The translations under genes and the position numbers were made by a program. A DNA stretch of 64,000 bases from positions 124,001 through 188,000 of IMG/VR virus record IMGVR_UViG_3300042922_000542; one strand, 5' to 3'. Numbering within the stretch: the stretch's first letter is position 1; every line of letters starts with the position of its first letter. Below, piece after piece: positions 102-36,154 of the stretch. Under the pieces are notes generated by a model. It saw only the letters and a program-made list of their open reading frames with translations. It searched no databases and had not been told where the DNA came from.

Positions 102-181
102 ACTATATTCGATTTAGGCATGTATTTAAATCAATATAAATATAATAAAATTAATTTGTAATTTTATATTAAAAAAATAAT

Positions 182-213
182 AAATAGGAGTGGGGATCAC
201 CCCACCCCTATTT
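182..213. terminator. intrinsic terminator hairpin downstream of beta'-N gene
   Basis: AAATAGGAGTGGGG-atca-CCCCACCCCTATTT stem, T-tract on minus strand, 8 nt after stop at 221. Confidence 0.75.
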
Positions 214-220
214 ATTATAT

Positions 221-379: not shown

Positions 380-1225
380 CGTTCTATTCACATAAGTTCG
401 CAACACCTATGCAGTTCTCTTATGAACTTCCCTAACTTTCATTAGGATACTAGACTATATCTTTACTCTACTGAATTAGAGTACATCTCGTTTCCCATTA
501 CTCTACTATCTTGAAAATAGCAGCCTGTCATTGGCTTACAGGGGTACTCCCATTACTGGGATAGTCGTTGAGGCTGATTCATAATATTAATTGAATTTAT
601 AATAACTCTGGTAAATTATTATATCTTCGTAATTATTCTGGTAAATTACTATCTGCTTCCCCTAGCGATGTCCCATTCTAAATTGTTTACGTTGTTATTG
701 GTCTTGTTCCCGTCTATATGACGAACACAAATCCATCCTTCTGGATTAGGGATAAATGTTCTGGCTACTAATTGATGAACTCTGATCTTATGTATAACTC
801 CTTTGTGTTCAAGTATTACATACAAGGAACCATTTCGGTTGCTACATTGGTCTAATGACTTTCCTGTTATCTTGTCCTTTACATCACCATTTGTACTGAC
901 TCTATATTGGGATCTCTTACCCTGTAGGTATATATCCCTCCATGATGTTTTATTTTTACCCATTAAGCAATTTATCATTTCTATACCCTCATTTATATTT
1001 TTTACCAGATAATATTTAATATTAATATTATGAAGCTTGCCTGCGGATTTGCAATATATCCTTAACATTTTTACTATACCTTAGGAATTACCCCTTGCCA
1101 TTATAACATCACTGTTATTATTTAGTAGTTAAGGCTTTATGCATCCAATTATCAATTTATAATAATCAGATAGAGTTCAAGTAACTCTGGTCCCCGCATA
1201 TATGAGATGATCGGCGACTCATTCC
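380..1225 (-). mobile_element. group I self-splicing intron (846 nt) with homing endonuclease ORF
   Basis: 5' splice site after U (GACGGU) pairs with IGS GCCG(A)UC giving a U.G wobble; intron ends in G (AGAACG|GAT); P element UGCGGGGA, Q element AAUCCGCAG (1041-1049), R element UCAACGACUA (562-571), S element AAGAUAUAGUCU (452-463). Confidence 0.93.
649..978 (-). CDS. intron-encoded NUMOD4-HNH homing endonuclease
   Basis: WRDI..Y.VST.G.V (NUMOD4) plus VHQLVARTFIPNP..VRHIDGNKTNNNVNNLEW (HNH_3). ORF-track start 1068 overlaps the Q element; GAGGG RBS supports ATG at 978. Confidence 0.88.
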   Translation of the reverse strand: MINCLMGKNKTSWRDIYLQGKRSQYRVSTNGDVKDKITGKSLDQCSNRNGSLYVILEHKGVIHKIRVHQLVARTFIPNPEGWICVRHIDGNKTNNNVNNLEWDIARGSR

Positions 1226-2449
1226 ACCGTCAAAATCGGCATTCAGTCCAGGAAGTATACCAGATGGAATTGATAATGTCATATCATCGCTATCAATTTT
1301 GACATTACGAATTTTCATCTTTAATATACTACCAAACGTTATTGTCGGATTTCTATTAATTATTTTCCAAGGCTTATATTTTTTAAGTACTAATTGTATT
1401 ATCGAATATATGTATTCATCATATTGAAATTTAGATTTTAAATAATTATGGGCCTTTGTAATAGTCCATCCCCTATCATTCATTATCTCCCTGATGATTT
1501 TTCCTGAATATAAAACAATAAATGTTTTATATGACACATCAATTTCATCCAATTTGAGTGTCGGGTCTAGTACGATTACATTTCTGCCCGTATAGTTAAA
1601 CTGTCCACCTAATACGTTTGCTCTAGCCCATCCATGTTTACCATCGATGAGTGAGAAATTTAAATTCCATAATTCATTGACTCTTTGCTGAGCAGAGTAT
1701 AAGTATAATGGAACTTCTATAGGTGAAGCTGTTTTAAGATTTAATGTAATTGCTGTTAATGGATGCACGTGCTTGTCAATAGGACTGAAATAATATGATT
1801 CTGTAGTAATTCCCTGTGGACGTAATACTGTGCTATACACAGGTATTTTAGATGTCCATAGAGAATCTTTCTCCGCAATTAATGAATCAATTAAATCAGC
1901 CTTCATTTTTCTCTTCTGTCGATAATATAACATAATTTCTTCAAAGTTTTGATAGAACTCATTCAATCCAATATTATGATATTTTAACATTGATTTTTTA
2001 ACTTCGATATCATCACCGTACTTACGTATTACACCAGTAGATGTTATGATATTATCATTAGCGATTATATTCTCCAAATTCTTCTTACTTAAAGCGGATT
2101 GTAGTTTTTGATAATAATATGGATTTATTACTTTATACGGATAGAAGTTTAGCCATCCTGTATACAAAATATCCACATCGGTGTATTCTATCTTTGTATT
2201 ACACTCTGGACATATTTCACCCTCAAGTATAGCTCCGATGTAATGACCGCACTTGCATCTATACCTATCTGAAAATTCATTATTATCGCCATATGTAGTT
2301 CCATATAAGGGTGAGCGTGGCCCACCCATATTTCGTATAGATTTGTCGATATCACTAAACGGTTTATCCGTTATTAAGAAGCCTTTATCATTCATGATAT
2401 CATAGTAACATTCTGTCTCAAAGTTGATTCTTGAAAATTTCATTCGCAT
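1226..2449 (-). CDS. rpoC: exon 1 of non-virion RNAP beta'-N subunit (spliced product 460 aa)
   Basis: Zn motif RYRCKCG..CPECN, RP motif (STVLRP), GKHGWAR..VLG..NYTGRNVI, INRNPTI, GLNADFDG. Confidence 0.95.
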
Positions 2450-2505: not shown

Positions 2506-3183
2506 TTATTTTCCATCAATCTTCATTTTATCAAGTTTCTCAAAACATTCTTTGATTATCATTGTATCAAAGAATGCATTGTGTTTTGATGATGAGAGTT
2601 CAGGTGTTGCAGATATATTGGTATCCATGATATCCTTGTCACCTGCTTTTATACCTGCAAATTCTTCTCTAGATATATCGGGATCAATATCATTAGCCCA
2701 TAACAAGGTCGATAAATCGATTGGAATATAATTTATAAACTTTGGCATACCCATTGCAGATTTATTAACACCATCATCTTTAGATAACAAATCCACAAAT
2801 AGTATCCAGTCATATGCATAACAATCAGTATAGATTTGTACCTGATCAGTATCTAATATTTCTGCTTCAGTTTCCAACCAATGATGCAATTCTTTTTTGA
2901 TATCTTCTCTGGTGCCAACCATTTCTATATTATATTGCTTCACACCACTATGATTATTAGATGCAAGGCTCTTCAATAAATATGAAAAATCTTCGATATT
3001 ACCATGGGAATGAATTAAATGTCCAATAACTTCTTTTTGAATCCAATCATTAACCTGATTTTTATCATAATCTGTAAATTCGGCGTAGAAATAATTACCC
3101 GATTCTGATATAAATGCTAAACTTATATAAGTACTATTGCGATGCAATCCCGTAAACTCGGAATCATGATAAATTCTATTCAT
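2506..3183 (-). CDS. DEDDh 3'-5' exonuclease, Rv2179c-like
   Basis: DSEFTG, SLAF, YFYAE, AYDWILF and HNAFFD motifs; GGAGG RBS favours ATG at 3183. Confidence 0.8.
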   Translation of the reverse strand: MNRIYHDSEFTGLHRNSTYISLAFISESGNYFYAEFTDYDKNQVNDWIQKEVIGHLIHSHGNIEDFSYLLKSLASNNHSGVKQYNIEMVGTREDIKKELHHWLETEAEILDTDQVQIYTDCYAYDWILFVDLLSKDDGVNKSAMGMPKFINYIPIDLSTLLWANDIDPDISREEFAGIKAGDKDIMDTNISATPELSSSKHNAFFDTMIIKECFEKLDKMKIDGK

Positions 3184-3216
3184 ATTAATATACCCTCCAA
3201 TTAGATCCAAATCTCA

Positions 3217-3417: not shown

Positions 3418-5112
3418 CTATACGTTGATTCCAATATTTTGATTTGCTAGAATTAAAAATGTTATTAGCTCATCTATCAATTGCCTTTTATTGAATGTAA
3501 TTTCTTTATCATATATATCGGGATTTTCATATAGTACGAATTTATATTTACTATTAGCAAACGTTATTAAAAATTTCTTAATTATATCATCATTGATATT
3601 GATTATGTTAGAATAATATTTCTTTACCAATGCAACATAATCATCGTTATCCTTTAAATATTTCATATCTTTGATGTACATTTTTTCTCCAACTGGGCGT
3701 TCTTCTATATTGGCAGTTAATATTAAAGGAAGTGCTGAATCACAGAGCGTGTTTTTATCAACATTGAAACGTTTCATAATATCACATCTCATGATTAATA
3801 GCAGTTTATACCAATCGAGATTTCTTAATAGAGCAAATTCTTGAGATGAGCCTGTATAGTTGAAGAAATATATTTCGATCATTAATTGATGGAGTCTCCC
3901 GGGTTTCATATTTCGTCTATAGTATTCAACCTCAGCAATAGATATTTCCTTTTCGTATTTCTTATAGAGGCTTTCAACCAACTGCTTCATATCGAGACTG
4001 CATAATGTTACATATTCTTCATTTATCTTCATTTTAGATGCTCGATATCTATCATTTTTACTATTACCATCCGCATCTGGTATGATTGATGTTTCAATTA
4101 GATTACGACGGAATACTTGCATAATAAAGTTACTGATGTGGGTATTCACTATGGAACATAGAAAAGATAGCACTCGCTCCCTAGGTTGTTCTTTAATACC
4201 ATCCCACGTTTGTGGCATTTGAAACTTGATAAAATTATCAATAATAACATTTCTGCTCATTAATTGATTTATGATTATTGATTTATCTTTACCTTCAATT
4301 TCCTGCTGTTCAAATATTGACTTATTGAAGTTATATGATGAATTAACTTTATTTTCAATATACGCAAATATTTTATTGTATATATTGAAATCATGTTCGA
4401 ACACTTCAAACATGTCTATGTAGAATTTATGGAATAGGTCTATGTTTTTCTGAATATTGATACTACGCATAACTGCGAAGTGATTTATAATGAATGATAA
4501 TATTTTTATACCAAATGCTATTTCGAGCATGGCTTTCACATGTTCGTTTAAAAATTCAAGTGATTTCTTTTTACGTTGCATAATGGATAACATGTCTGGG
4601 TTCTTCATGTTATTGGTGTTTTCAGCTTCAATATCATCCATATAATTTTCTTCAACCATTTGAGTTATTTTAGCTTTAATTGAAGGCGTGAATATAGTTT
4701 TATAACATAAATCTTTAAATGCATCAAAGTTCTTCAATGTAAATGAAATGTTATCAACATCTATCAAATATTTTATTCTAAATAATGCTGCTATGAGTTC
4801 ACCTTCTTTATCATACATCGTTTCAAAGAAGTTCAATTCCTCACATAGTTTTGGAAGATATGTTGAGTATGATAGCTTAGTCACCTTCCATTCATTAAGA
4901 ACTGATATATTTTCATTTCCTAATTGATTTAATTCTTTATTGAATTTTATTATTAATATCTTTGGTAATGCGAAAAATCTAGCATCGTCCGGATATAATT
5001 TCCATTTAATCCAATATGATGATGCTCCATTAGGGAATGAGTGTTTCTTATAATCCCACCTAGGTAAGTCCTTTACTTTTTCAACCGGTTTTAGTGCATT
5101 AATTTGAAGCAT
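3418..5112 (-). CDS. sigma-like promoter-specificity subunit of non-virion RNAP (AR9 gp226 / phiKZ gp68 family)
   Basis: Colinear resemblance, from recall, to AR9 gp226: KFNKEL..ENISVLNEWKVTKLSY, LIAALFRIKY, ITQMVEENY, AMLEIAFGIKILSFII, C-terminal ITFNKRQLIDELITFL; lies in the operon leading to beta'-N. Confidence 0.75.
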   Translation of the reverse strand: MLQINALKPVEKVKDLPRWDYKKHSFPNGASSYWIKWKLYPDDARFFALPKILIIKFNKELNQLGNENISVLNEWKVTKLSYSTYLPKLCEELNFFETMYDKEGELIAALFRIKYLIDVDNISFTLKNFDAFKDLCYKTIFTPSIKAKITQMVEENYMDDIEAENTNNMKNPDMLSIMQRKKKSLEFLNEHVKAMLEIAFGIKILSFIINHFAVMRSINIQKNIDLFHKFYIDMFEVFEHDFNIYNKIFAYIENKVNSSYNFNKSIFEQQEIEGKDKSIIINQLMSRNVIIDNFIKFQMPQTWDGIKEQPRERVLSFLCSIVNTHISNFIMQVFRRNLIETSIIPDADGNSKNDRYRASKMKINEEYVTLCSLDMKQLVESLYKKYEKEISIAEVEYYRRNMKPGRLHQLMIEIYFFNYTGSSQEFALLRNLDWYKLLLIMRCDIMKRFNVDKNTLCDSALPLILTANIEERPVGEKMYIKDMKYLKDNDDYVALVKKYYSNIININDDIIKKFLITFANSKYKFVLYENPDIYDKEITFNKRQLIDELITFLILANQNIGINV

Positions 5113-7601: not shown

Positions 7602-9629
7602 CTATAAAGATATTAAACTAGTTGTAATATTAGCTTTACCATTCGGGGTCTTAATTGGAATAGTTTCTAATTTGAATGCATCTAATACAGATCTAAAAGA
7701 ACTGCATACATCCGAGATGATTGTAGTGTAATCTATTAATTCTCTAATCCATTCAGGTGTTTCATGTATAGTTGACGGTATTGCGATAACTTTCATTCCA
7801 GCTTTAATTAATTCAGGATCCGATGATTTAAATATATTATTATAAATTAATTTATATTCTTCTGGATATTTATCTTTTATCTTATCTAGATCCTGTAAAC
7901 CTGTCACAACTGTCTTTACTAATTTAACTTTGTCCAATGAATATATTTTATTATTAGGATACATTGCATTCCATACTGCCACTGCTTTATATACTTGAAC
8001 CGACCATGGTTTCTTATAAGCATCTCCTGATTTATAACTCTGAGGTTTGAGATATTGAGTTCCACCTTGTTTTAGATCATGATATATTTCCTTCTCAAAT
8101 CTTTTTACCTCTCGCATCAACTCATGTAGTTGCAATTCCTCTGAGAACAAAATATATTTTTCTAGCATTTTTGTAAATACCTTAGTAACGTGATCGCTAA
8201 CACCGGCCTTTATAAAATCCAATCCTTTGATTTCAGTCTTATATGGAACCATAATGTGACCCTCACGTAATACAATGCTACTAGCATATCTCTTTTTCTT
8301 TTGCATCAATAAAAATCGTTTAAATAGGAATTCATTTTTCATTGTCATTTCTTTACGTGCATCCGCATTTGCATTATGTAAGATACCGTATGTGTCAAGT
8401 ATTTTTTTAACTGGGGTATCGAGTAGCGTTGCTAATATGTTAACTGTTATCATTTCATTATACAAACGATTTCTATTGAATGTTTCATCCTTACATATTG
8501 CATCAAGTATAAATGTTACAAATTCATTAGTATACAATACATTTGAATCAGTATCAACTAACAATACCCTATTTCGGAAATGATTATTCAATTTAATAAT
8601 ACTATCCGGAGTTAAATAATTCACAAAGCACATCTGTGTTACGATTTCAACTAATTTTGTCATTTCATTCTTTATAATATCTGGAATCGTATATGGGTCT
8701 AGGAACATTTCTCGAGATACCCAATCATTGTATTTATTGATCTCTGAAAATTTATTTTTGAATTCATCAGGTATTGTATCTTCAGATGCTTCATATAATG
8801 GGAGATTACTTAATACATCCCGAATTATATTTTTAACTTTATCATGTCTCTCAATAAACGTGTGCAAGTTATTTGCATAAAATATATAACATAGCTCACT
8901 ATCAGTACAATTATCGATATATGCATTAATTGTAACTGTATCTTTTATATCGAATGGCATGAAATGTGATATAATACGATGACGGATTTCATCTCTACTT
9001 GGAATTACAACCCATTTTGGAATCTCATCTTCTTTTGCACAAATATGATTTAACCAATCAATACATTCATTAATATGGAAAAATTTCATATTATCGCCAA
9101 TATATCCTTCAAAGAACGCTGCCATTGTGGTTATGATACTTTGCGCCATAAGAGTTGTTGCAGCGGGTGAATATTTTGTATAGAAAGCTGCAGTTGGAGC
9201 ACCAGATCCGCCATATTCAGCATTCATTACAACTTTAACATTACTTTGACCAAGATCCAACATAGCATATTTATCATCACTAGGTTTATATTTAAACATT
9301 TCACCCTTGATGCTTTTTCTTTCCTTCTTTAACGATCGGAGCATGTTTGACGTTGGAGACTGTAATACTTCAGGTTGAACATAGAAAGTAGCATTACCTG
9401 ATACAACCGGACACTTTGTATCAATCCAATGACATAAATCAACTAAATTTGTTACTAAATTTTCTTTTGTTACATTATTATCCATAATTATCGTCGGATT
9501 CGACATATCTTGTTTCATACTTTTTATAACAGTTTTTCTAACAAGTTCTGCATCTAAGGTTGGATCCATTTTCAAGATGGTGTCAACTGCTGTTTCTACA
9601 TATTTTGATTTAAAACTCATACTCATCAC
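7602..9629 (-). CDS. polB: family B DNA polymerase, phiKZ/AR9-type split catalytic subunit
   Basis: KVVMNAEYG (motif B), VDTDS (motif C), KKRYA, EIKGLDFIK; no exonuclease domain and no motif A in this ORF. Confidence 0.9.
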   Translation of the reverse strand: MMSMSFKSKYVETAVDTILKMDPTLDAELVRKTVIKSMKQDMSNPTIIMDNNVTKENLVTNLVDLCHWIDTKCPVVSGNATFYVQPEVLQSPTSNMLRSLKKERKSIKGEMFKYKPSDDKYAMLDLGQSNVKVVMNAEYGGSGAPTAAFYTKYSPAATTLMAQSIITTMAAFFEGYIGDNMKFFHINECIDWLNHICAKEDEIPKWVVIPSRDEIRHRIISHFMPFDIKDTVTINAYIDNCTDSELCYIFYANNLHTFIERHDKVKNIIRDVLSNLPLYEASEDTIPDEFKNKFSEINKYNDWVSREMFLDPYTIPDIIKNEMTKLVEIVTQMCFVNYLTPDSIIKLNNHFRNRVLLVDTDSNVLYTNEFVTFILDAICKDETFNRNRLYNEMITVNILATLLDTPVKKILDTYGILHNANADARKEMTMKNEFLFKRFLLMQKKKRYASSIVLREGHIMVPYKTEIKGLDFIKAGVSDHVTKVFTKMLEKYILFSEELQLHELMREVKRFEKEIYHDLKQGGTQYLKPQSYKSGDAYKKPWSVQVYKAVAVWNAMYPNNKIYSLDKVKLVKTVVTGLQDLDKIKDKYPEEYKLIYNNIFKSSDPELIKAGMKVIAIPSTIHETPEWIRELIDYTTIISDVCSSFRSVLDAFKLETIPIKTPNGKANITTSLISL

Positions 9630-9664: not shown

Positions 9665-9692
9665 ATTAATATTAAATATGTAAATTTAATAA

Positions 9693-9722
9693 TATATAGG
9701 AGTCGTTTCGGACTCCTATATA
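9693..9722. terminator. intrinsic terminator after 9736 ORF
   Basis: TATATAGGAGTC-gtttcg-GACTCCTATATA stem, T-tract on minus strand. Confidence 0.75.
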
Positions 9723-12565: not shown

Positions 12566-15500
12566 ATGATTGATAATATAACCACTGGAATTGAATTAAG
12601 TAATTTAGACTATGATACATATGCTCTTACACAAGACGGTTCATTTTCAGAAGCATATAAATTTACATCAATTGAATTTAATCGAATATATACTTCAAAA
12701 GTTCGTTTACCAGATGGAAAGAGTAATATCATATATTTATTATCTGATACATTTGATAAAACAGTTGATTTATTAAATCACAATAGTATTAGTATACCAC
12801 CTACATATCGTAAAGTATATTATCCAATTGTGAAGCAAGGAACATTTCTCAATAGACGTTATCGTATGAATTTTCTTAAAGCTAAAGTTGAAAGGGATGC
12901 ATTCATAAAAACTCAAACAAATCGAAAAAGGATTGCATATCCAAGTAGAACCATTTCAGCAACATCTACTGATAATTTATTTTTCATTACATCTGATTTA
13001 TATAATGTAGTCTCACCTGTAATGAAAAATGTTTCGATTAATAAATTAATGAAAACATTTTTTAATGATTTTATTGATATACTGCAGTCAATGACACCTG
13101 CTAATCAGGAGGCTAAAGGTCCTGAATTTAGTAATAGAATCTTAATCGTCGATGCAGATGCATTTAGATTCTCGGGTGGATCGTTAACTGAAAATAAAAC
13201 AAATCTATTATTTTTATTATATCTATCATTTTTAAGAACTCGTGACAACTCAGCAACGGGTGCTGATATTGATATAGTTATATTAAGTAAAAATTTACTT
13301 ATGAAATTTAATCCTGCAAGAATAAATCCAAATAAATTTAATAAATTTAGAACAGCATTATTTAGAATAATGAAAACCAATTTGGATGATTATACTGCAA
13401 CATTAACTGAGGATGAACAAAAGGAACTTACGATATCATCTGATGATATAATTACGAAAAATATAGTAGATAAAAAGGTTGATGTTTATACAAAATACAG
13501 TTCACCTGCAGTACGTACTGCATTAGCAAGTGCTATTGATAGTGAATTACGTTCAAAACATATGCAATCAATGGCTCGTGAAGATATAACTAAATCTACG
13601 CAAAACGAAATATCTACTGGTAAAAAAATGACTGGTAAAGATTATGATAATATTAATCACTCGATCGAATATAAAATGTCTAAAACTGTAGTGAATGATT
13701 TGAGTAGAACGCCTAAGACTGTTAAAGACTCTCAAGATACAAGAAAGCGTGATTTATTTAAATCGGTTATCGGTGGCGGTTATGAACCTCTCGTTAGTGA
13801 AGAAGAAATTGATATGGGTGCAGTTGAGGATGATATTATCGGTAAACAGGATCCTGCGGAGTTGGATGATTATATCGATAATGTATCAGATGAAATTGAT
13901 AATATCATATTAAATGATAAAAGCATTGCTGAAGATATAATTGATGAAATACAAACTCGTACGATTCCTATGGGTAGTAAACGAAACTCCCCAGTTAATG
14001 GACCATTAGATGAGAAACTAAGGGAACAACAGAAAAAGGTTGTCGTTAGGGATTCTACAATAGAAGAAATTTTATCACGTGAAAATTCAGCAATACCTGT
14101 TCAAACCGATGATAAGTCCGCAAGTTTCAAAAGCTTAAATCCGAATGTTAAAACTATTACGTTTGCTAACTTTGATAAGACTTATATAGAGGAATTATAT
14201 AGTGCCGATTTAGTTGCAGTATTCAATTCACTACAGGATAAATCAACGCCGTTTTATATAACATCGATTGATATCACCGATGCTTCAACTGCGTTAGATC
14301 TTAAAGAAACATGGAAAGTACACCTAAAAGATGAAACTGGTAAGTCCCATACTATTACGGTAGATATACCAAAATTTTATCAAAATAAATTCTTATGGCT
14401 CGGCGGCAATAAGAAAATGATAATGAAACAAAATCTATATAATCCAATAGTAAAAGACACGGCAGATTCAGTTATAATAACAACTAACTACAATAAAGTC
14501 ACTGTAACTCGTAGAGCTACAAAATCATTTGCTCAAATTGAAAATTTATTTTCACTGGTTAAAAAAGTGGATGATGTCGAAATGTTTATTGCAGGTGATG
14601 CATCTAAAATAAACATGAAATATATATCGACATTAGAATATGATGAGATCGGTAAATCATTATTTAAATTTAAATCGGGTGATTGTGAATTATTCTTTAA
14701 TAGGGAATATATTAATAATAATATTAATACCACAGAGACTATTGGTAACAATGAATTTATTATAGGTTTCGAAGGTAAAACGCCTGTAATCATACATGAA
14801 GATACCGGTAAAGATAGAAATAATAGAACAATCATCGAAGTCATATATCAAAATCTATCTGATGAACATAAGGCTATATTTGATTCGACTAAGGCTAGAA
14901 AACAAGCTATGTATGCTGAAGGAAAATTATTAGGTCAATTTGTTCCAGTGATTGTGACATTGATAGTATGGAATGGAATAACTAAAACATTAGACGCGAT
15001 GGATATCCAATGGCAATTCCATAAAGATGTAAAACGATTACCAAAAATGAATTTTAATATGAGTTATATTAAATTTGAAGATGGAATCCTTGAATATGAA
15101 TCAAACCTATTTACCCAGCTCATATTAAATGGATTAAATAAGCTAGGACCTGAACACCTTACATTTGAATCATTAAATGATGAAAGTGGATATATTGAAT
15201 ATCTCCATTCAATATTCGGTACATATACAATCGTGACACAGTTCAGAACATTCTATGAATTTTTAGTAGATCCTGTAACAAAAGATATTTGCCGAGATAT
15301 GTTTTTACCACAGACACCTGAAGGCCTTATGATACATTCTGTAAAATTATTAGCAAATAATGCATATATTAATAAAGCATCAGATAAATCATATAGAATT
15401 AGATCTGTGGAAATAATACCCGCTATATTATATAATAAAATAGCTGCACAATACACGAAATATGTTACATCGGGTAGAAGAATACCATTTAGTTTACCAA

Positions 15501-17050
15501 AAGAAACTGTTATCAAAGAATTATTAGCAGTTAACACGGTTGAGGATTATTCAACTCTTAACCCAGCAATCGAAATTGGTAAATCATATGGAATATCAGC
15601 GAGAGGTTATAAAGGTTCTAATACCGATAGATCATATGATGAGGAAAAACGTTCATACGATGAATCATCAATTGGTAAACTAGCGATGTCATCTCCAAAT
15701 GATGCCAATATCGGTATAACTCGTGAGTTAGTTGTTGAGCCTACAATTACAAATGCAAGAGGGTGCCGCGCACCAGTAGAGGATCTCGACGACCTTAAGG
15801 ATGTTAATATATTTAGTCCTGTGGAGCTTTTGACACCCGGTACTGTAAGAATGGATGATCCAATACGTACTGCAATTGCAGGTAAACAAACTCGTCACTT
15901 GGTTCCTGTTGCAAATGCATCTCCTGCGTTAATATCTAATGGATTTGATGAGGCGATTCAATTTCATCTCTCATCGGACTTTGTTGTTAATGCGGAAGAA
16001 GATGGTGAAGTTGTAGAAGTAAATGAAGAAGTTGGTTTCATTATCGTTAAATATAAATCAGGTAATACACAGGCAATAAACATTAATCCTGAAATAGTAA
16101 AAAATGGCGGTGGAGGATTCTATCTATCAAATACTTTAAGAGCGACTGTTAAATTGCACGATAAATTTAAAAAAGATGATGTGTTGGCATATCATGATAA
16201 ATATTTTAAATTCTCAAAGAATAATGGATTGCGTTTTGCTATAGGTCCGCTTGTAAAATGCGCATTTATATCAACATATAATACCTATGAGGATGCTGGT
16301 ATATGTACAGAAAAATTGGCGGATATGATGAAAACATCCATCGTATATAAAGAGGTTGGTACGTTTAAACGAAATTCAAACGTAATTAATATGGTTAATG
16401 TAGGTGATCATGTTAATATTGGAGATTCATTAATTAAATATGATACATCGTTTGATGACACTGAAATTTCAAAACTCATGGCTCATCTGTCGGATGAAAA
16501 TAAAGAATTGATTGAAGAAACCTCCAAGAATGATGTTATAACGCAACATGCGGGTAAAGTTGTTGACATTAAGATATTTACTCTACATGATCCTTCTAAT
16601 CTATCACCAACTTTAGGTGATGTTGTTAAAAAATACTTTGATGTAGGATTATCTAGAAAAGAATTATTAACGAAATATGATTCATCTGAAGGAATTATAA
16701 AAGCTGGTTATCTATTAACAGAAACAATTGAGCCGGTTGTATCTAGATATAATGATATTAAAGGTATAAAGACTGATGTGTTAATAGAATTTTATATTGA
16801 ACATGGTGATGTTGCCGGCATCGGTGATAAAATAGTATTATACGGACCTAATAAGCAGATTATCTCTGAAGTAATTCCAAAAGGATATGAACCATACTCA
16901 GAATTACATCCGGATGAGGAGATATCAGTATTTACAAGTCCGGGTACTATAGCAAGGCGTATGACATCAAGTATTATTCCTATTTCTATGGGGATGAAAA
17001 TCATGGTCGAGCTAAAAAGAAAAATTAAAGATATTATAAAATATAAGTAA
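12566..17050 (+). CDS. rpoB: virion RNAP beta subunit, large N-terminal part (phiKZ gp178-like)
   Basis: GKLAMSSP.DANIGITREL, DDPIRTAIAGKQ.RH.VP, GDKIV.YGPNKQIISEVIP, SPGTIARRM; 1494 aa with a long N-terminal extension. Confidence 0.9.
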   Translation: MIDNITTGIELSNLDYDTYALTQDGSFSEAYKFTSIEFNRIYTSKVRLPDGKSNIIYLLSDTFDKTVDLLNHNSISIPPTYRKVYYPIVKQGTFLNRRYRMNFLKAKVERDAFIKTQTNRKRIAYPSRTISATSTDNLFFITSDLYNVVSPVMKNVSINKLMKTFFNDFIDILQSMTPANQEAKGPEFSNRILIVDADAFRFSGGSLTENKTNLLFLLYLSFLRTRDNSATGADIDIVILSKNLLMKFNPARINPNKFNKFRTALFRIMKTNLDDYTATLTEDEQKELTISSDDIITKNIVDKKVDVYTKYSSPAVRTALASAIDSELRSKHMQSMAREDITKSTQNEISTGKKMTGKDYDNINHSIEYKMSKTVVNDLSRTPKTVKDSQDTRKRDLFKSVIGGGYEPLVSEEEIDMGAVEDDIIGKQDPAELDDYIDNVSDEIDNIILNDKSIAEDIIDEIQTRTIPMGSKRNSPVNGPLDEKLREQQKKVVVRDSTIEEILSRENSAIPVQTDDKSASFKSLNPNVKTITFANFDKTYIEELYSADLVAVFNSLQDKSTPFYITSIDITDASTALDLKETWKVHLKDETGKSHTITVDIPKFYQNKFLWLGGNKKMIMKQNLYNPIVKDTADSVIITTNYNKVTVTRRATKSFAQIENLFSLVKKVDDVEMFIAGDASKINMKYISTLEYDEIGKSLFKFKSGDCELFFNREYINNNINTTETIGNNEFIIGFEGKTPVIIHEDTGKDRNNRTIIEVIYQNLSDEHKAIFDSTKARKQAMYAEGKLLGQFVPVIVTLIVWNGITKTLDAMDIQWQFHKDVKRLPKMNFNMSYIKFEDGILEYESNLFTQLILNGLNKLGPEHLTFESLNDESGYIEYLHSIFGTYTIVTQFRTFYEFLVDPVTKDICRDMFLPQTPEGLMIHSVKLLANNAYINKASDKSYRIRSVEIIPAILYNKIAAQYTKYVTSGRRIPFSLPKETVIKELLAVNTVEDYSTLNPAIEIGKSYGISARGYKGSNTDRSYDEEKRSYDESSIGKLAMSSPNDANIGITRELVVEPTITNARGCRAPVEDLDDLKDVNIFSPVELLTPGTVRMDDPIRTAIAGKQTRHLVPVANASPALISNGFDEAIQFHLSSDFVVNAEEDGEVVEVNEEVGFIIVKYKSGNTQAININPEIVKNGGGGFYLSNTLRATVKLHDKFKKDDVLAYHDKYFKFSKNNGLRFAIGPLVKCAFISTYNTYEDAGICTEKLADMMKTSIVYKEVGTFKRNSNVINMVNVGDHVNIGDSLIKYDTSFDDTEISKLMAHLSDENKELIEETSKNDVITQHAGKVVDIKIFTLHDPSNLSPTLGDVVKKYFDVGLSRKELLTKYDSSEGIIKAGYLLTETIEPVVSRYNDIKGIKTDVLIEFYIEHGDVAGIGDKIVLYGPNKQIISEVIPKGYEPYSELHPDEEISVFTSPGTIARRMTSSIIPISMGMKIMVELKRKIKDIIKYK

Positions 17051-23181: not shown

Positions 23182-23206
23182 AACCCCTTTATAAAACACT
23201 ATATTG
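23182..23206 (+). promoter_or_regulatory. late-type promoter candidates AACC-N6-TA (23182-23193) and AACA-N6-TG (23195-23206)
   Basis: Match the AR9-type late consensus; directly upstream of a virion gene. Confidence 0.5.
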
Positions 23207-23224: not shown

Positions 23225-25510
23225 ATGATATTATATATGCCAACAATATTACCAAGTGGGGAAGAGGTGTTTGTAACACCTGAAGAAATATTAAAGTATT
23301 TAAACAGTGATGGACTACGTCAACTCCTACGTCAGGAGCGTCTTCATTGGAATTTAAAACCAAATAAGGATGCCGATTATTATAGTAAAGCAACTAACTA
23401 TAAATATAGTGGTGACCTTCATAACGAAGGAGATCATCAGAGAATGGAAGTTAGAACATTCCCTGATAATGGTGCAAACCCAGGATATGCTGGTGTAGCA
23501 GTCGATGGTGGAGAATTCGGTTTAACTCATAATAGAGAAAAATGGGATCATGCACTAAGCGATGAGTCTAAAGAAGCAATTAGTCAAAGAGTCGAGGTCG
23601 GAGTTTCCGGAGTTCGCGCAGATAAAATGGGATATGGTCTTGAGGGAGAAGTTGTCGAAAAGAATTCCCATAATAGAGAAGCCAGTATGATTTTTGATTC
23701 CGTTGATGGTAGGGCGTATTTATTATCAAATGATGAGCCGTTCTATGTTAATAATGAAGAACGTTCTCCTGAAACAAGATTACCATTAAGAACTGTAGCA
23801 AGAATTGCTGATATTCCAACTAGAATAACAGATCTTGGTAATGATTTCGATTTTATATCAGATTGGGATTATCATCACACTGATAATGATTTTACACATT
23901 CAAACAGATATGTTCTTGATAATTTAGATGATAGGACATTTGTATCACCAGAAATATCGAAAGATGCAAGTGGTAGTTATATAAGTAATAATTATGTCGG
24001 CCTTGCTGGATTGAGTAATTATGCTGAAGGTGACAGTACTGGATCTGATGGTGGTCGTGCATCAAACATTCAACCTGAAATAGGTTCTAATAATGATAGG
24101 CAAAATGCTGCGGTAAATAGTTATAATAAAAATAAAAATTTCAGTGGTAATAACTATTCAAACGGATATTTTCCTGGTGTATTCAAATCATTCGAGGAAT
24201 TAGAAAAGGTGGATATATTAAGACAAAAAAGAACTACATTAAATAGTGCAACGCCTGGCGGCAGACGAAGACAAAATTATTATGAATTCGATGGAATCTG
24301 GGCATATAATAGTTATGATAGAACTGCCAGTGATACAAGTTATCTATCTGAAAGTCATAATCCTACTAATATAGAAAATGCTATTGGATTTAAGCCGACT
24401 TCATTTAATAATTTAAATCAAGACACTACATTTAATTCTTCAATGTTATACCAATGGAGATACAATAGGGTTAGTGTTTATTGGGAATCTAAAAATATTA
24501 CTATATTAATTGCGGATCCTGGAGTTGATTATAAAGTTGGCGACTTGTTAAGATATACATACACTAATGAAATTATAACATATAAAGTCAATAGTGTTGG
24601 ACCTAATGGAGAAATACTAAGTGGTCAATATCTAACACCAGATATACCAGTCAGATTTGAACAAGACCCATCTACAAATGGAATTGGTGTCCCATTCACT
24701 GATTATGTTTCTGGTGGAAAAGGTGCAACTTTGATTATTGCATGTAAAGCATCAGTATATGTAAATGCAACTCAAATAAAAAATAATTTATATGCATATG
24801 TCGATGTTGTACCTACAGTGCGTAGTGACAATACATCTAAATGGTCAGATATTAATAATCCATCTACCGACAATGGTGTTGTTGTTCGTAGTACTGCACC
24901 ATCGCCAGCATACACTGGAGTTAATAGTGGTCGCGGAGGAGATGCCCCATCAAGTTTATCATCCGAACATGCATTCTATGAGCATGGTGGAAATGCTACA
25001 GCTGGGCCGCATATACACATATTCAAATATGTTATAAATACAACTGATCCAACATGGGAAATTGTGGACGGCGTAAAAGTATATACTGGTAAATGGGTTG
25101 ATTGCGGTCCTCTAGGTTTGGAAAGACCTGCTGATATCAAGGCGTTATTATTTTCCAATTCAGATTGTAATAACTTTAATAATTATTATAAATTTACTTT
25201 GGATATAATGTTAGATATGATGAATCGTAATCCTGATAGAGTTATATCCAACAATGAAACCGCTTTGAGTAATATGTATATACATATGGCGGAATCAGAT
25301 CCGGAACCTGATAAAAAATTCTATATTAAACGTATAAATCCAATAACATCTGCAATTGAAACAGTTGATATTACAAATAAAGTGTATTATATCAATATGG
25401 GTACAAGGGTTCCATTTGTATATAACGCCGGACCTAAAAATGACCCAACTTTCGGTTATGGAAATACTCCAATAGGCTGGGTATCACTTGTAGGAACAAT
25501 TGGTAATTAA
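23225..25510 (+). CDS. putative virion structural protein (baseplate/tail-associated)
   Basis: 761 aa, G/S/N-rich, ADPGVDYKVGD and GGKGATL fibre-type motifs; precedes the neck gene. Confidence 0.55.
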   Translation: MILYMPTILPSGEEVFVTPEEILKYLNSDGLRQLLRQERLHWNLKPNKDADYYSKATNYKYSGDLHNEGDHQRMEVRTFPDNGANPGYAGVAVDGGEFGLTHNREKWDHALSDESKEAISQRVEVGVSGVRADKMGYGLEGEVVEKNSHNREASMIFDSVDGRAYLLSNDEPFYVNNEERSPETRLPLRTVARIADIPTRITDLGNDFDFISDWDYHHTDNDFTHSNRYVLDNLDDRTFVSPEISKDASGSYISNNYVGLAGLSNYAEGDSTGSDGGRASNIQPEIGSNNDRQNAAVNSYNKNKNFSGNNYSNGYFPGVFKSFEELEKVDILRQKRTTLNSATPGGRRRQNYYEFDGIWAYNSYDRTASDTSYLSESHNPTNIENAIGFKPTSFNNLNQDTTFNSSMLYQWRYNRVSVYWESKNITILIADPGVDYKVGDLLRYTYTNEIITYKVNSVGPNGEILSGQYLTPDIPVRFEQDPSTNGIGVPFTDYVSGGKGATLIIACKASVYVNATQIKNNLYAYVDVVPTVRSDNTSKWSDINNPSTDNGVVVRSTAPSPAYTGVNSGRGGDAPSSLSSEHAFYEHGGNATAGPHIHIFKYVINTTDPTWEIVDGVKVYTGKWVDCGPLGLERPADIKALLFSNSDCNNFNNYYKFTLDIMLDMMNRNPDRVISNNETALSNMYIHMAESDPEPDKKFYIKRINPITSAIETVDITNKVYYINMGTRVPFVYNAGPKNDPTFGYGNTPIGWVSLVGTIGN

Positions 25511-31337: not shown

Positions 31338-31349
31338 AACCTGTTTATA
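31338..31349 (+). promoter_or_regulatory. late-type promoter AACCTGTTTATA
   Basis: Identical 12-mer at 58248-58259 (minus) upstream of another virion operon; follows a terminator. Confidence 0.6.
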
Positions 31350-31402
31350 AATGTTTTATGTACAATTGATCATAATGAATACACGGAGAGGTGATATAAA
31401 TT

Positions 31403-34012: not shown

Positions 34013-36154
34013 ATGTACGTTCTACCACATATACGAACAATACATGACTGTGAGAGGGAGTTTGGGGATGTTATAATCATTTCTCATTATAATACCTATG
34101 AAAAATTTGATGAATTATATTGGAAAGTATATTATGCAATTTGCGCATGTTATGAAATTTCAGAGTGCGTTAAATATAAAATACGTTTCAAATTTTACGA
34201 TTCCGATAGTAAGACCTATGAGCTATCTATGGTTAAATTTCTTTTAAATATAAACGCATGGAGACCACTAATTGAATTATATCAATTGCAAAAATATTAT
34301 CATTATAAATTAGAAGTATTGGATGAAAGCTTCATCATTAACAGAATGATGAGTGATACATTAAGAATAGGATTGGAATCTAAAGTATTGAAGACATTAG
34401 ATGATTATGGTATCTCATTTGAAAGATCATCTGATCTAATAAAGACTGTTATCGAAAGATATCAAGAGATATCGATCGAGTTTTCGTTGTTAGCTCCAGC
34501 CGGAATATTTACTCTTGAGAATTGTTTCCTAAACGATTATATGAATAATGAAAAGATTCGAGAGTTAAATAATACTGTAATATCACAAAATATTCAAACT
34601 GCCGATGTTGAGGAATTATTAAAAGAGAAGTATAATGAGCTTGTCGTAGAGTTAGGTAAAACTAAGAACCCGATATGGTATGTTAGTAAAGCAGGTAATC
34701 ACATCAAAGCTAAACAGGTACAAGAATTATTTATTTCGTACGGTCAGGTTCCGAATGTTGATGGTAATGTAATTCCTTATACGATGGAAGGTAATGGATT
34801 CAGTACTGGGTTTAATAGCCCATCTGCATATTATGTTGCCGCAACTGGTGCTAGATTATCGGCTATCATGAATAAAACTAAAATGGGTGAAGCGGGTTAT
34901 CTATCTCGTAATTTAATTTTATTGAGTAGAACAATGCATCTCTCTACAACTACATTTGATTGTGGTACTAAACACATGCTTGAATTATTTGTATCAAGTT
35001 CAACTATGTTGAGGAGATTGGAGAATCGTTGGTTTTGTGAATATTTGGGGGATCCATTACAATGCATTCATTATGAAACCCATAAACATTTAATTGGTAA
35101 GAAAATTTATGTGAGGTCTTTGTTAACATGTGCAGGTGGTGATGAGGTATGTCATGTATGTTACGGACGAGATAGTCACCTTGTTGCAAATATGCCAGGT
35201 ATGGCAATATTTAATACGGAAGTTTATTCAGAACCAGTATCGCAAAATATATTATCCACTAAACATTTATTGTTTACAGCCGCCAATAAATTGACATTCA
35301 GCGATTCGTTTGATAAATATTTTAAATTTAATGCAGGGGATATTTATTTGAAGGATCAAGATGAATGGAATAATGAGTTACCATTTGAATATTTAAGCAT
35401 AAGAATTGAAGAAAGCAATGTGCTATCCGTTAATGAACAGGATATAATTGAATATAGTACATTCGGTAATAATATAGAATCCCCATTCTTTATATATAAT
35501 AAAAAGACCGGCGAATATGATAAAATAGAAATAATAAATGCTGAATCCATGTTTATAGATGCGACATCTATGAAATTATTCAAAACAGTTATTGATAAGA
35601 AGCATGCGAATAGTAAGTTTTATGAACTTCCGCTACATACAATAGCTACTGAATTAGAGGGTCGTTTAATGTCAGTTGATATTAAAAATAATGGATTAAC
35701 CGATAACCTCTATATGATAATGGACTTATTAAATAAAAATGCATCTAAATATGATGATTATAATCAACTTGCACAATACTTCTTTGAAATGTTAATTAAT
35801 GTTGGAATCCGTTGCAGAAATATTCAAGCAGAAATTATATTAAATCGATTGATACGCGATAATAATGATATATATGCTAGACCTGATTTTTCTAAATTCA
35901 AAGCGCCTGAATATAAAATATTGACATTGAATCAAGCATTGATAAATACCAAAGCACCTACAATAGGTTTATCATATCAAGAAATCAAACGTCAATTACT
36001 CAGCGATGATCTTTATGCCAGTAAGAATGGAGCATCATATTTAGATCCTATGTATGCGACATCAATCAGTACTGATCGTTTAAAAGAAATACATAATAAG
36101 TTAAGAAATAAATTAAAGGAGAAAAAGGAAAATGAGCAATCAGAACATAAATAA
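34013..36154 (+). CDS. rpoC: non-virion RNAP beta'-C subunit (AR9 gp154 / phiKZ gp74-like)
   Basis: KQVQELFISYG..P, GARLSAIMNK..GEAGYLSR (bridge helix), DCG, LTC..VCHVCYG Zn site, EPVSQNILSTKHLL (trigger loop). Confidence 0.92.
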   Translation: MYVLPHIRTIHDCEREFGDVIIISHYNTYEKFDELYWKVYYAICACYEISECVKYKIRFKFYDSDSKTYELSMVKFLLNINAWRPLIELYQLQKYYHYKLEVLDESFIINRMMSDTLRIGLESKVLKTLDDYGISFERSSDLIKTVIERYQEISIEFSLLAPAGIFTLENCFLNDYMNNEKIRELNNTVISQNIQTADVEELLKEKYNELVVELGKTKNPIWYVSKAGNHIKAKQVQELFISYGQVPNVDGNVIPYTMEGNGFSTGFNSPSAYYVAATGARLSAIMNKTKMGEAGYLSRNLILLSRTMHLSTTTFDCGTKHMLELFVSSSTMLRRLENRWFCEYLGDPLQCIHYETHKHLIGKKIYVRSLLTCAGGDEVCHVCYGRDSHLVANMPGMAIFNTEVYSEPVSQNILSTKHLLFTAANKLTFSDSFDKYFKFNAGDIYLKDQDEWNNELPFEYLSIRIEESNVLSVNEQDIIEYSTFGNNIESPFFIYNKKTGEYDKIEIINAESMFIDATSMKLFKTVIDKKHANSKFYELPLHTIATELEGRLMSVDIKNNGLTDNLYMIMDLLNKNASKYDDYNQLAQYFFEMLINVGIRCRNIQAEIILNRLIRDNNDIYARPDFSKFKAPEYKILTLNQALINTKAPTIGLSYQEIKRQLLSDDLYASKNGASYLDPMYATSISTDRLKEIHNKLRNKLKEKKENEQSEHK

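What the first reader, a model, noticed from the sequence alone, without database searches (positions are those of the whole stretch)
3418..5112. gp226-like sigma factor raises the question of a uracil-DNA genome
Seen: block-by-block resemblance to AR9 gp226 (from recall) and late promoter candidates of the AR9 form AACA-N6-T(A/G). Known: AR9 DNA contains dU instead of dT, and gp226 reads template-strand uracils through a pocket involving Val206. Inference: this phage may have dU-DNA. However, the segment I align by eye to the AR9 pocket (YNFNKSIF) is not clearly conserved, so it may be a thymine-tolerant version of the same mechanism.
Basis: partly seen in the sequence, partly recalled or inferred. 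Interest (0 to 1): 0.6.

Follow-up and report, generated by a model that had tools for sequence, protein, structure and literature searches.

The report
Thymine-type AR9-like phage sigma factor
The gene is a true relative of the phage AR9 promoter-recognition subunit gp226, but this complete jumbo-phage genome makes its own thymidylate and destroys dUTP, so it almost certainly has ordinary thymine DNA and is a natural thymine-reading version of a factor known so far from uracil-DNA phages.

Summary
Window 3418..5112 (-) encodes a 564-aa protein. It has no direct sequence match to anything named. A profile built through metagenomic intermediates hits AR9 gp226 end to end (E 2e-67; hhalign probability 100%). 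A pLDDT-88 model matches the gp226 structure (Z 27 over 431 residues), then phiKZ gp68, then nothing. Homologues of all four non-virion RNA polymerase core pieces are in the genome.

The uracil-DNA inference fails. The genome is closed and rated 100% complete. It carries thyA next to DHFR, and a five-motif dUTPase. Five isolated phages with gp226 homologues, four of which the literature lists as uracil-DNA, carry no ThyA, ThyX or dUTPase. The uracil-selecting Val206 of AR9 aligns to Ser265, a position that varies within this clade. The D-x-V-I-W-x-[Y/F] signature of those five phages reads N-K-S-I-F-E-Q here.

The raw AACA-N6-T(A/G) pattern is not enriched; it is depleted. The refined form AAC[A/C]-N6-TAA is conserved with strict spacing upstream of the capsid, portal and virion genes in five related genomes. 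It is purged about 10-fold or more from coding DNA on both strands.

Best reading: a thymine-tolerant gp226 that still uses an AR9-type late promoter.

The parts
3418..5112 (-). Gene for the gp226-family promoter-specificity (sigma-like) subunit of the non-virion RNA polymerase, 564 aa (P0001)
   Evidence: ORF. Profile A2 against PDB hits 7s01_A at E 2.3e-67. hhalign probability 100%. Foldseek E 1.1e-16. VIA-align Z 27.2.
4300..4335 (-). Codons for residues 260-271 (YNFNKSIFEQQE), the equivalent of the AR9 2.1bis helix. The Ser265 codon (4318..4320) lies opposite AR9 Val206, Ile266 opposite Ile207, and Gln269 opposite Tyr210.
   Evidence: Alignments. DNA read. The model has a short helix at 264-272. 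Residue roles come from PMC9209446.
3445..4029 (-). C-terminal domain (residues 362-556), the sigma4-like upstream-DNA-binding domain of gp226
   Evidence: 7um1_A (gp226 CTD): Z 15.0, rmsd 3.2 A, 168 of 173 residues. phiKZ gp68 CTD: Z 11-12.
1166..2449 (-). Non-virion RNAP beta' N-terminal piece, homologue of AR9 g270 and phiKZ gp55, in the same leftward gene string
   Evidence: PF00623 and phrog_2987. BLASTP to AR9 g270 E 2.4e-36 and to phiKZ gp55 E 1.7e-14.
34013..36154 (+). Non-virion RNAP beta' C-terminal piece, homologue of the AR9 ORF at 127805-129700
   Evidence: BLASTP E 7.7e-36. Naming that AR9 ORF g154 rests on my own knowledge and was not checked in the annotation.
61078..63396 (-). 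Non-virion RNAP beta C-terminal piece, homologue of AR9 g089
   Evidence: BLASTP E 3e-87, 32% identity over 655 aa.
12566..17050 (+). Virion RNAP beta-like subunit, homologue of AR9 g189. It shows that the phage has the two-polymerase programme.
   Evidence: BLASTP E 1e-62 and 8e-36 to the AR9 g189 exons.
9689..9698 (-). Exact TATATATTAT, an AR9-early-promoter-like motif, at the head of the leftward gene string (DNA polymerase 9629..7602, three ORFs, the gp226-like gene, RNase H-like 3210..2506, beta'N)
   Evidence: Genome-wide there are 43 copies, 35 of them in the 7.2% of the genome that is intergenic. The annotated AR9 early promoters read AAATATATATTAT.
177..218 (-). Terminator-like hairpin (19 pairs followed by a T run) at the end of that gene string
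44197..44209 (+). Candidate late promoter AACAGAAGCATAA, 72 nt upstream of virion-protein gene 44269..46125. The 12-mer is identical in G003 and G004 although the flanks have diverged.
   Evidence: The gene is a homologue of the AR9 g214 virion protein.
44220..44232 (+). Second AAC[AC]-N6-TAA site, 49 nt upstream of the same gene
23182..23194 (+). Intergenic AAC[AC]-N6-TAA site, 43 nt upstream of gene 23225..25510
31338..31350 (+). Intergenic AAC[AC]-N6-TAA site (AACCTGTTTATAA), 65 nt upstream of the next plus-strand gene
58247..58259 (-). Intergenic AAC[AC]-N6-TAA site, the same 13-mer AACCTGTTTATAA, 39 nt upstream of gene 57135..58220 (-)

Best explanation
The gene encodes the fifth, sigma-like subunit of this jumbo phage's non-virion multisubunit RNA polymerase and is a member of the AR9 gp226 family. 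By homology, it is made early, probably from a virion-polymerase promoter at the head of its gene string. It then binds the split beta/beta' core and directs it to late promoters. The promoter element it reads is of the AR9 type, AAC[A/C]-N6-TAA on the coding strand. In AR9 this element is read on the template strand by the short 2.1bis helix together with the beta-N subunit. Here the DNA contains thymine, not uracil: the phage makes dTMP with ThyA and DHFR and removes dUTP with its own dUTPase. The helix residues that exclude thymine in AR9 are replaced (Val206 to Ser265, Asp204 to Asn, Trp208 to Phe, Tyr210 to Gln). Family membership, fold, the polymerase gene set, the thymidylate genes, the conserved upstream motif and its purge from coding DNA were shown here. 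Physical binding to the core, template-strand reading, which residues admit thymine, and the chemical nature of the DNA are inferred.
For: Family and fold:
- Profile A2 against PDB finds only gp226, at E 2.3e-67. hhalign gives probability 100%.
- Intermediates link both ways: P0126 scores E 1.6e-80 to the query profile and 5.6e-13 to gp226.
- Foldseek and VIA-align give gp226 (Z 27.2), then phiKZ gp68 (Z 11-12), then a drop to 5.5.

Context:
- Homologues of AR9 g270, g089, g105 and the beta'C piece are present, plus a virion RNAP subunit.
- 54 AR9 ORFs have BLASTP hits in this genome.

Thymine:
- The genome has direct terminal repeats and is rated 100% complete.
- ThyA scores 295 bits on PF00303 and 209 on TIGR03284 (cut-off 108). 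The catalytic Cys and the dUMP-specific Asn are visible in the sequence.
- DHFR is adjacent, at 161 bits.
- The dUTPase is above both NCBIfam cut-offs and shows all five motifs.
- Zero of 5 isolated gp226-bearing phages have ThyA, ThyX or dUTPase.
- Counting this genome, 9 of 10 complete or near-complete relatives without the valine signature have at least one of them.
- The five isolates read D-x-V-I-W-x-[YF]. This clade reads N-x-[S/A/T/P/M/K]-[I/M]-[F/Y]-x-Q.

Promoter:
- AAC[AC]-N6-TA is conserved in orthologous upstream regions of 4 gene families (capsid, portal, two others). Other spacings and permuted 4-mers give 0-1.
- Inside CDS, AAC[AC]-Ng-TAA at g = 0, 3, 6, 9, 12 counts 54, 78, 8, 65, 60 in sense and 50, 45, 8, 47, 31 in antisense. 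The dip recurs in all five clade genomes.
- A blind scan ranks this motif among the most depleted of more than 2000 patterns.
- 12 of the 28 remaining sites are intergenic, all within 120 nt upstream of a same-strand gene.
- AACA-N6-TA is also the single most depleted pattern in the unrelated-host phages S6 and G007.
Against: - No experiment bears on any step.
- The contrast between the valine signature and the thymidylate genes is essentially one phylogenetic split, not many independent events.
- Position 265 varies even within the clade (S, A, T, P, M, and V or I in some members). No single residue can therefore be named as the thymine switch, and AR9's exclusion of thymine at -11 comes from DNA backbone packing, which cannot be judged from sequence.
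- Serine still has a C-beta, whereas the tested AR9 mutant was V206G.
- One complete clade member (G004) has no ThyA, ThyX or dUTPase.
- Intergenic AAC[AC]-N6-TAA sites are no more frequent than control spacings (12 against 13 and 10). The statistical signal lies in the purge and in conservation, not in enrichment.
- The beta-N Lys375 that contacts the -10 base in AR9 aligns to Glu, with a Lys next to it.
- The complex prediction gave no verdict.
Confidence: 0.75

Rival explanations
1. One reading: the phage has dU-DNA and the factor needs template-strand uracils, as in AR9.
For: The protein is a true gp226 homologue. An AR9-type AACA-N6-TA element is conserved upstream of late genes. No nucleus-shell protein was detected by BLAST or phmmer, as in the uracil phages (a weak test). 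One clade member has no thymidylate synthase or dUTPase.
Against: thyA, folA and dut sit in a closed genome at phage-like GC of 0.31-0.35. A phage dUTPase would destroy the precursor that dU-DNA needs. All five isolated gp226-bearing phages lack these genes. Val206 and the rest of the conserved helix signature are absent. No Ugi, dCMP deaminase or AR9-type 5'-nucleotidase homologue was found.
Confidence: 0.05
2. The protein is a gp226-family subunit in a thymine phage, but its promoter is something else. On this reading, the purge of AAC-N7-TAA reflects avoidance of a host Type I restriction site, which has the same bipartite look.
For: The depletion is symmetric on both strands and 10- to 50-fold, as is typical of restriction avoidance. 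Tyr210, which stacks on the -9 G in AR9, is Gln here. Upstream density of the motif is not above control spacings. Only about a dozen sites exist, against 56 motif-bearing upstream regions in AR9.
Against: The surviving sites are not purged from intergenic DNA. They sit 34-85 nt upstream of same-strand genes. They are conserved at orthologous positions with strict N6 spacing and the same A/C choice at the fourth base. The core AACA-N6-TA is also the most depleted pattern in Staphylococcus phage S6 and in G007, which are unlikely to share one host restriction system. The motif is the known promoter of the family's type member.
Confidence: 0.15
3. The DNA carries a thymine derivative (for example one derived from 5-hydroxymethyl-dU) rather than plain thymine, and the ThyA homologue is a hydroxymethylase.
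For: ThyA-fold enzymes include dUMP and dCMP hydroxymethylases, and jumbo phages often modify their DNA.
Against: The protein passes the thymidylate synthase equivalog model and lies next to DHFR. DHFR is needed only when the reaction yields dihydrofolate (the enzymology is textbook knowledge). Clade relatives carry ThyX instead, which also makes dTMP. I made no search for hydroxymethyl-dU kinases or transferases.
Confidence: 0.04

Closest known systems
Bacillus phage AR9/PBS1 gp226 (PDB 7S01, 7UM0, 7UM1)
   Same: It shares the full-length two-domain fold (Z 27.2 over 431 residues, about 20% identity) and a collinear profile alignment. The partner polymerase genes are the same. The 2.1bis helix is present with Ile207 kept as Ile266, and beta-N Arg363 is kept as Arg368. 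An AACA-N6-TA type element lies upstream of late genes, and the early-promoter motif is similar.
   Different: This protein is 100 residues longer. Val206 is Ser, Asp204 is Asn, Trp208 is Phe and Tyr210 is Gln. The genome encodes ThyA, DHFR and dUTPase and lacks Ugi and dCMP deaminase. The promoter is longer (a TAA end, with A or C at the fourth base), rarer, and purged from coding DNA, which AR9 does not show.
AR9 gp226 V206G, the engineered thymine-accepting mutant (PMC9209446)
   Same: Loss of the valine side chain at the -10 pocket goes with acceptance of thymine. The natural protein here also lacks that valine.
   Different: The natural residue is Ser and varies in the clade. Several neighbouring helix residues differ as well. 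Thymine must also be accepted at -11, which the single AR9 mutant was not reported to achieve. Nothing was tested experimentally here.
Pseudomonas phage phiKZ gp68 (PDB 7OGP, 7OGR, 8QUE, 9RJS)
   Same: It is the fifth subunit of a split non-virion RNAP in a thymine-DNA jumbo phage. The C-terminal domain superposes (Z 11-12, rmsd 3.6-3.9 A).
   Different: The similarity is far more remote, at 7-11% identity with no BLAST or phmmer hit. phiKZ late promoters are TATG at the start site (PMC7598289). phiKZ builds a nucleus shell, and no shell protein was detected here.
Bacterial sigma-70 family factors
   Same: They have the same role and a weak structural echo of the sigma2 region (5tjg_F, Z 4.2 over model residues 180-332).
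   Different: There is no sequence similarity and no Pfam sigma domain. In AR9 the -10-like element is read on the template strand rather than the non-template strand (PMC9209446).

Membership tests
gp226/gp68 family of non-virion RNAP promoter-specificity subunits | Detectable homology to gp226 over the full length | tested here: met
   Profile E 2.3e-67 and hhalign probability 100%. Direct pairwise comparison is not significant.
gp226/gp68 family of non-virion RNAP promoter-specificity subunits | Two-domain all-helical fold (sigma2-like NTD, sigma4-like CTD) | tested here: met
   Model pLDDT 88. 7s01_A Z 27.2. CTD Z 15.0 at rmsd 3.2 A. gp68 Z 11-12.
gp226/gp68 family of non-virion RNAP promoter-specificity subunits | Genome encodes the split beta and beta' core pieces of a non-virion RNAP | tested here: met
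   Homologues of AR9 g270, g089, g105 and the beta'C piece.
gp226/gp68 family of non-virion RNAP promoter-specificity subunits | Short 2.1bis helix between the sigma 2.1- and 2.2-like helices | tested here: met
   Predicted helix 264-272 aligns to AR9 205-214.
gp226/gp68 family of non-virion RNAP promoter-specificity subunits | Binds the core and confers promoter-specific initiation | tested here: inconclusive
   Complex prediction with beta'N gave no verdict. Biochemistry is not possible with these tools.
Uracil-specific gp226 subgroup (AR9, BpSp, S6, phiR1-37, LPJP1) | Helix signature D-x-V-I-W-x-[Y/F] with the valine that clashes with a C5 methyl group | tested here: not met
   The sequence here is N-K-S-I-F-E-Q. 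The role of the valine comes from PMC9209446.
dU-DNA jumbo phages | No thymidylate synthase and no dUTPase | tested here: not met
   ThyA, DHFR and dUTPase are present. All are absent in the five control phages.
dU-DNA jumbo phages | Uracil-supporting functions (Ugi, dCMP/dCTP deaminase, dTMP-removing nucleotidase) | tested here: not met
   No PF00383 hit. No BLASTP hit to AR9 g104, g221 or g151. This was tested at BLAST or Pfam level only.
dU-DNA jumbo phages | Deoxyuridine replaces thymidine in virion DNA | not testable with these tools
   This needs LC-MS or UDG digestion of virion DNA.
AR9-type late promoters (AACA-N6-TA/G) | Motif upstream of late genes with fixed N6 spacing | tested here: met
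   It is conserved upstream of the capsid, portal and two other gene families at N6 only.
AR9-type late promoters (AACA-N6-TA/G) | Motif is the dominant upstream signal of the genome, and the TG variant is used | tested here: not met
   Rank 662 here against rank 1 in AR9. The TG form is at chance and is not depleted.
AR9-type late promoters (AACA-N6-TA/G) | Transcripts start at the TA | not testable with these tools

The most novel reading that the evidence does not exclude
A large, mostly metagenomic branch of the gp226 family (254 clusters at 50% identity) serves thymine-DNA jumbo phages that kept AR9's template-strand promoter element. These phages cannot use uracil to tell their own DNA from host DNA. 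They may instead rely on a longer element, AAC[A/C]-N6-TAA, and on near-complete removal of that element from their own coding sequence. On this reading the uracil-dependent AR9 enzyme is a specialised offshoot rather than the ancestral state. This clade would then offer natural sequences showing how the pocket admits thymine at both -11 and -10.
Probability: 0.45. Interest if true: 0.65.

Novelty: new variant of a known kind. Interest (0 to 1): 0.5.

Why it matters
gp226 is the only known sigma-like factor that reads its -10-like element on the template strand. It has been studied only in a uracil-DNA phage, where uracil dependence was proposed as the way to ignore host DNA. A natural thymine-genome relative that keeps the same promoter architecture gives a direct test of which pocket residues set U/T selectivity. 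The only current data point is the engineered V206G mutant. It also raises the question of how such a phage avoids wasteful initiation; the strong purge of the motif from its genes is a candidate answer. In addition, the thyA/thyX/dut gene content together with the helix signature may offer a way to sort uncultured AR9-like phages into uracil and thymine types. That marker rests so far on one phylogenetic split.

Tried and rejected
Searches that found nothing:
- Direct searches with the single protein were blank: Pfam, PHROGs, PDB phmmer, and tblastn against 50,697 phage records.
- The close-relative profile A1 against PDB gave only noise.
- The search for related loci failed or found nothing with the diverse alignment A2 (no conserved stretch), with P0154 and with P0219. 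I therefore could not test whether valine-bearing metagenomic members lack thymidylate genes.
- Five half-genome fragments (44-52% complete), including a valine-bearing clade member, showed no ThyA, ThyX or dUTPase. This is uninformative.

Promoter statistics that were not informative:
- Plain k-mer enrichment upstream of genes found only Shine-Dalgarno, terminator and early-promoter signals.
- A gap scan of AACA-Ng-TA in upstream regions of this genome alone showed no N6 peak. The signal appeared only with conservation across genomes and with same-codon-phase comparison inside genes.

Other checks:
- beta-N pocket: Arg363 is kept, but Lys375 cannot be placed reliably.
- Complex prediction (beta'N with residues 40-350) gave no verdict and is evidence neither way.
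I tried no other route to reads, and read laying was not used.
- The nucleus-shell protein was sought only by BLASTP and phmmer with phiKZ gp54, and nothing was found. This is a weak test.
- An early reading of window 7602..9629 as beta'C was wrong: it is the family-B DNA polymerase.
Full report
**What is at the coordinates.** Window 3418..5112 (minus strand) is one uninterrupted ORF of 564 aa (P0001). The window is bases 124001-188000 of a single 246,147-bp virus contig. The contig has a 127-bp terminal overlap. IMG/VR classes it as having direct terminal repeats, and CheckV rates it 100% complete. GC is about 30%. Because the genome is closed, statements about gene presence and absence carry weight.

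**Is it like gp226?**

Not by direct comparison.
- Pfam, PHROGs, PDB phmmer and tblastn against 50,697 phage records are blank.
- BLASTP against AR9 gp226, taken from the GenBank record, is not significant.
- A word search found 136 metagenomic relatives, all at least 62% identical, on contigs up to about 300 kb.
- A profile of 19 of these (A1) still found nothing in PDB. Against gp226 it gave only a suggestive collinear hhalign match (E 0.0066, probability 5.7%).

Because the family scans left the protein open, I ran the exhaustive profile search. It found 254 representative clusters at E <= 1e-3.
- An alignment of P0001 with 84 full-length members (A2) hits one PDB sequence, 7s01_A, 7um0 and 7um1 (AR9 gp226). 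The score is E 2.3e-67 over residues 10-461 of 464.
- hhalign of A2 against gp226 gives probability 100%, E 2.2e-39.
- Intermediates connect both ways. P0126, for example, scores E 1.6e-80 to the query profile and 5.6e-13 by BLASTP to gp226.

Structure agrees.
- The model from A2 has pLDDT 88 and pTM 0.64.
- Foldseek gives 7s01_A at E 1.1e-16, 7um0_A at 6.5e-14 and phiKZ gp68 (8que_B) at 3.2e-6. Apart from two further gp226 and gp68 entries, nothing scores below E 1.
- VIA-align gives Z 27.2 over 431 residues (model 40-556 against chain 2-464).
- The C-terminal domain gives Z 15.0 at rmsd 3.2 A over 168 of 173 residues.
- gp68 gives Z 11-12, and the next match is an unrelated 5.5.

**Context.**
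- Window 1166..2449 (-) is an RNAP beta' N-terminal piece (PF00623, phrog_2987). It matches AR9 g270, the non-virion beta'N (E 2.4e-36), and phiKZ gp55.
- BLASTP of all AR9 ORFs against this genome gives 54 shared ORFs.
- These include g089 (beta C, window 61078..63396), g105 (beta N, genome 216235-217956), the beta'C piece (window 34013..36154) and the virion-RNAP subunit g189 (window 12566..17050).
- The gp226-like gene lies in a leftward gene string. The string starts behind an exact TATATATTAT at 9689-9698 (-) and ends at a strong hairpin at 218-177.
- That 10-mer occurs 43 times in the genome, 35 times in the 7.2% that is intergenic. It is the core of the annotated AR9 early promoters, AAATATATATTAT.
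- So the two-polymerase programme of AR9 is present.

**The pocket.** The facts about AR9 in this paragraph come from PMC9209446.
- The template-strand -10 uracil sits between gp226 Ile207 and beta-N Arg363.
- Its C5 atom is 3.9 A from the C-beta of Val206. The V206G mutant accepts thymine.
- Tyr210 stacks on the -9 G.
- The valine was absolutely conserved in the twelve homologues then known, all from dU phages.

Both profile alignments place P0001 N263-K264-S265-I266-F267-E268-Q269 opposite AR9 D204-V205-V206-I207-W208-T209-Y210.

An HMM-anchored table shows a clean split.
- AR9, BpSp, phiR1-37, S6 and LPJP1 read D-x-V-I-W-x-[Y/F].
- P0001 and the IMG/VR relatives read N-x-[S/A/T/P/M/K]-[I/M]-[F/Y]-x-Q. 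One clade member has V.
- Across A2 the position is V 14, G 11, T 10, K 10, P 8, L 8, I 5 and S 4 of 85.
- beta-N Arg363 is kept (Arg368). Lys375 aligns to Glu with a Lys beside it, which is inconclusive.

**Uracil or thymine?**

This genome encodes the following.
- A ThyA: PF00303 at 295 bits, and TIGR03284 at 209 bits against a cut-off of 108. The PC motif cysteine and the PFN asparagine are visible. It lies at genome 25292-26080.
- A DHFR immediately next to it (PF00186, 161 bits).
- A trimeric dUTPase above the NF001862 and TIGR00576 cut-offs, with all five motifs readable. It lies at genome 33744-34340.
- Their GC (0.31-0.35) is phage-like.
- It has no ThyX and no dCMP deaminase. It has no BLASTP match to AR9 Ugi, dCMP deaminase or the 5'-nucleotidase g151.

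As a control, AR9, BpSp, LPJP1, S6 and phiR1-37 have no ThyA, ThyX or dUTPase. The review PMC7598289 lists AR9/PBS2, BpSp, phiR1-37 and S6 as uracil-DNA phages.

Among IMG/VR relatives of the non-valine type:
- G001, G002 and G003 have ThyX and dUTPase.
- G005 has ThyA.
- G006 and G007 have ThyX and dUTPase.
- G008 has dUTPase.
- G009 (66% complete) has ThyA.
- G004 has none of the three.

DHFR is needed only when thymidylate synthase produces dihydrofolate, and a dUTPase removes the precursor that a dU genome would need (textbook enzymology). I therefore put thymine DNA at about 0.9. One caveat applies: the contrast is close to a single phylogenetic split.

**Promoters.**

The raw reader pattern is not above chance.
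- It occurs 75 times in the window against 130 +/- 12 in shuffles.
- I ran a blind enumeration of every 4-mer-N(4-8)-2-mer pattern in upstream regions. In AR9 it puts AACA-N6-TA at rank 1 of 12,254 (56 regions against 10.5 expected, z 15.5).
- In this genome the same pattern is at rank 662 (16 against 8.8), and the TG form is at chance.

Three further results change the picture.

(a) The element is conserved upstream of late genes.
- Upstream of the capsid and portal genes, five clade genomes whose proteins are only 54-61% identical keep the element while the flanks diverge.
- For the capsid gene all five keep AAC[AC]AT-N4-TAAA.
- For the portal gene four of five keep GTAACA-N6-TAA.
- Over 61 ortholog families, AAC[AC]-N6-TA is conserved in 4. 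Spacings N3-5 and N7-9, and permuted 4-mers, give 0-1.

(b) The element is purged from coding DNA.
- Inside coding sequence, at same-codon-phase spacings g = 0, 3, 6, 9, 12, AAC[AC]-Ng-TAA counts 54, 78, 8, 65, 60 in sense and 50, 45, 8, 47, 31 in antisense.
- The same dip is seen in all five genomes, down to 1 and 0 in G001.
- A blind scan of all 4-mer-N6-2-mer patterns against N3 and N9 was run on each genome.
- It ranks TTA[N]-N6-GT, the reverse complement of the same motif, among the most depleted of more than 2000 patterns.
- AACA-N6-TA is also among the most depleted, at z -4.9 to -7.9.
- AACA-N6-TG is not depleted, and AR9 shows no depletion.

(c) The surviving sites lie upstream of genes.
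- Only 28 sites remain in this genome. Twelve or thirteen are intergenic, depending on how one site at a gene boundary is scored.
- All lie 34-85 nt upstream of a same-strand gene.
- The pattern repeats in the other four genomes. In G001, for example, 9 of 10 sites are intergenic.

AACA-N6-TA is also the single most depleted pattern in Staphylococcus phage S6 and in G007. That argues against a host-specific restriction site and for a promoter shared by the family. The counter-point is that intergenic density is no higher than for control spacings. The evidence is therefore purge plus conservation, not enrichment.

**Mechanism proposed.** The subunit is probably made early. By homology it joins the split core. 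It then directs the polymerase to a small set of late promoters, AAC[A/C]-N6-TAA. If read as in AR9, on the template strand, the element is 3'-TTG[T/G] with thymines. The remodelled 2.1bis helix is the likely reason that thymine is tolerated. Which residues are responsible cannot be told from sequence. Position 265 varies within the clade, and in AR9 the exclusion of thymine at -11 comes from DNA backbone packing.

**Comparison and novelty.** The protein is a member of the gp226 family. It does not belong to the uracil-specific subgroup. Thymine-reading fifth subunits are already known from phiKZ gp68, but gp68 is far more remote and uses a different promoter (TATG). The papers I read for this do not describe a natural thymine-genome lineage of close gp226 relatives that keeps the AR9 element. 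The 2026 review still presents uracil as the strategy of the non-nucleus phages. I rate this a new variant of a known kind, of moderate interest.

**Limits.** Everything here is computational. The complex prediction gave no verdict.

Noticed in passing
whole genome; window examples 9689-9698 (-), 12045-12054 (+), 36699-36708 (+), 40492-40501 (+): TATATATTAT occurs 43 times in the genome, 35 of them in the 7.2% that is intergenic. It matches the core of the annotated AR9 early (virion-polymerase) promoters, AAATATATATTAT.
   Followed up: partly
L030:874-1288 (a close relative's gp226-like gene); also L024, L026, L027, L031: In several close relatives the gp226-like gene is 360-500 nt longer or split. 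In L030 the insert is a group I intron (RF00028, 55 bits, E 4.7e-12). The other inserts gave no Rfam hit. The gene in this window is uninterrupted.
   Followed up: partly
genome 24757-26080 (outside the window), compared with relatives G001-G004: The thymidylate synthase type differs within one clade. This genome has ThyA and DHFR, G001-G003 have ThyX, and G004 has neither. This suggests repeated gain or replacement of the module.
   Followed up: partly
window 31338-31350 (+) and 58247-58259 (-): The same 13-mer, AACCTGTTTATAA, sits upstream of two different genes on opposite strands.
   Followed up: no
Staphylococcus phage S6 (L150-L163) and IMG/VR genome G007 (L123-L135): AACA-N6-TA is the single most depleted 4-mer-N6-2-mer pattern, relative to same-phase spacings, in both genomes (z -5.0 and -4.3). 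It is not depleted in AR9 or phiR1-37.
   Followed up: partly
window 402-464: A stretch of 53-63 nt is 94-98% identical to HNH homing endonuclease genes of Vibrio cholerae phages JA-1, VCO139 and JSF3. This was the only megablast hit of the first 12 kb.
   Followed up: no
window 5943-6746 (-): A 267-aa ORF has no family hit and a long Q/N/Y/G-rich low-complexity C-terminal tail. It sits between the DNA polymerase and the gp226-like gene.
   Followed up: no
whole genome and G001-G004: No homologue of the phiKZ nucleus-shell protein gp54 was found by BLASTP or phmmer. A thymine-DNA two-polymerase jumbo phage without a shell would be unusual, but this is a weak test.
   Followed up: partly
upstream regions genome-wide: Strong AAAGGAG-type Shine-Dalgarno sequences are present (38 of 148 upstream regions carry AAGGAG). 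One relative was binned with a Lachnospiraceae MAG. Both hint at a Firmicutes gut host.
   Followed up: no
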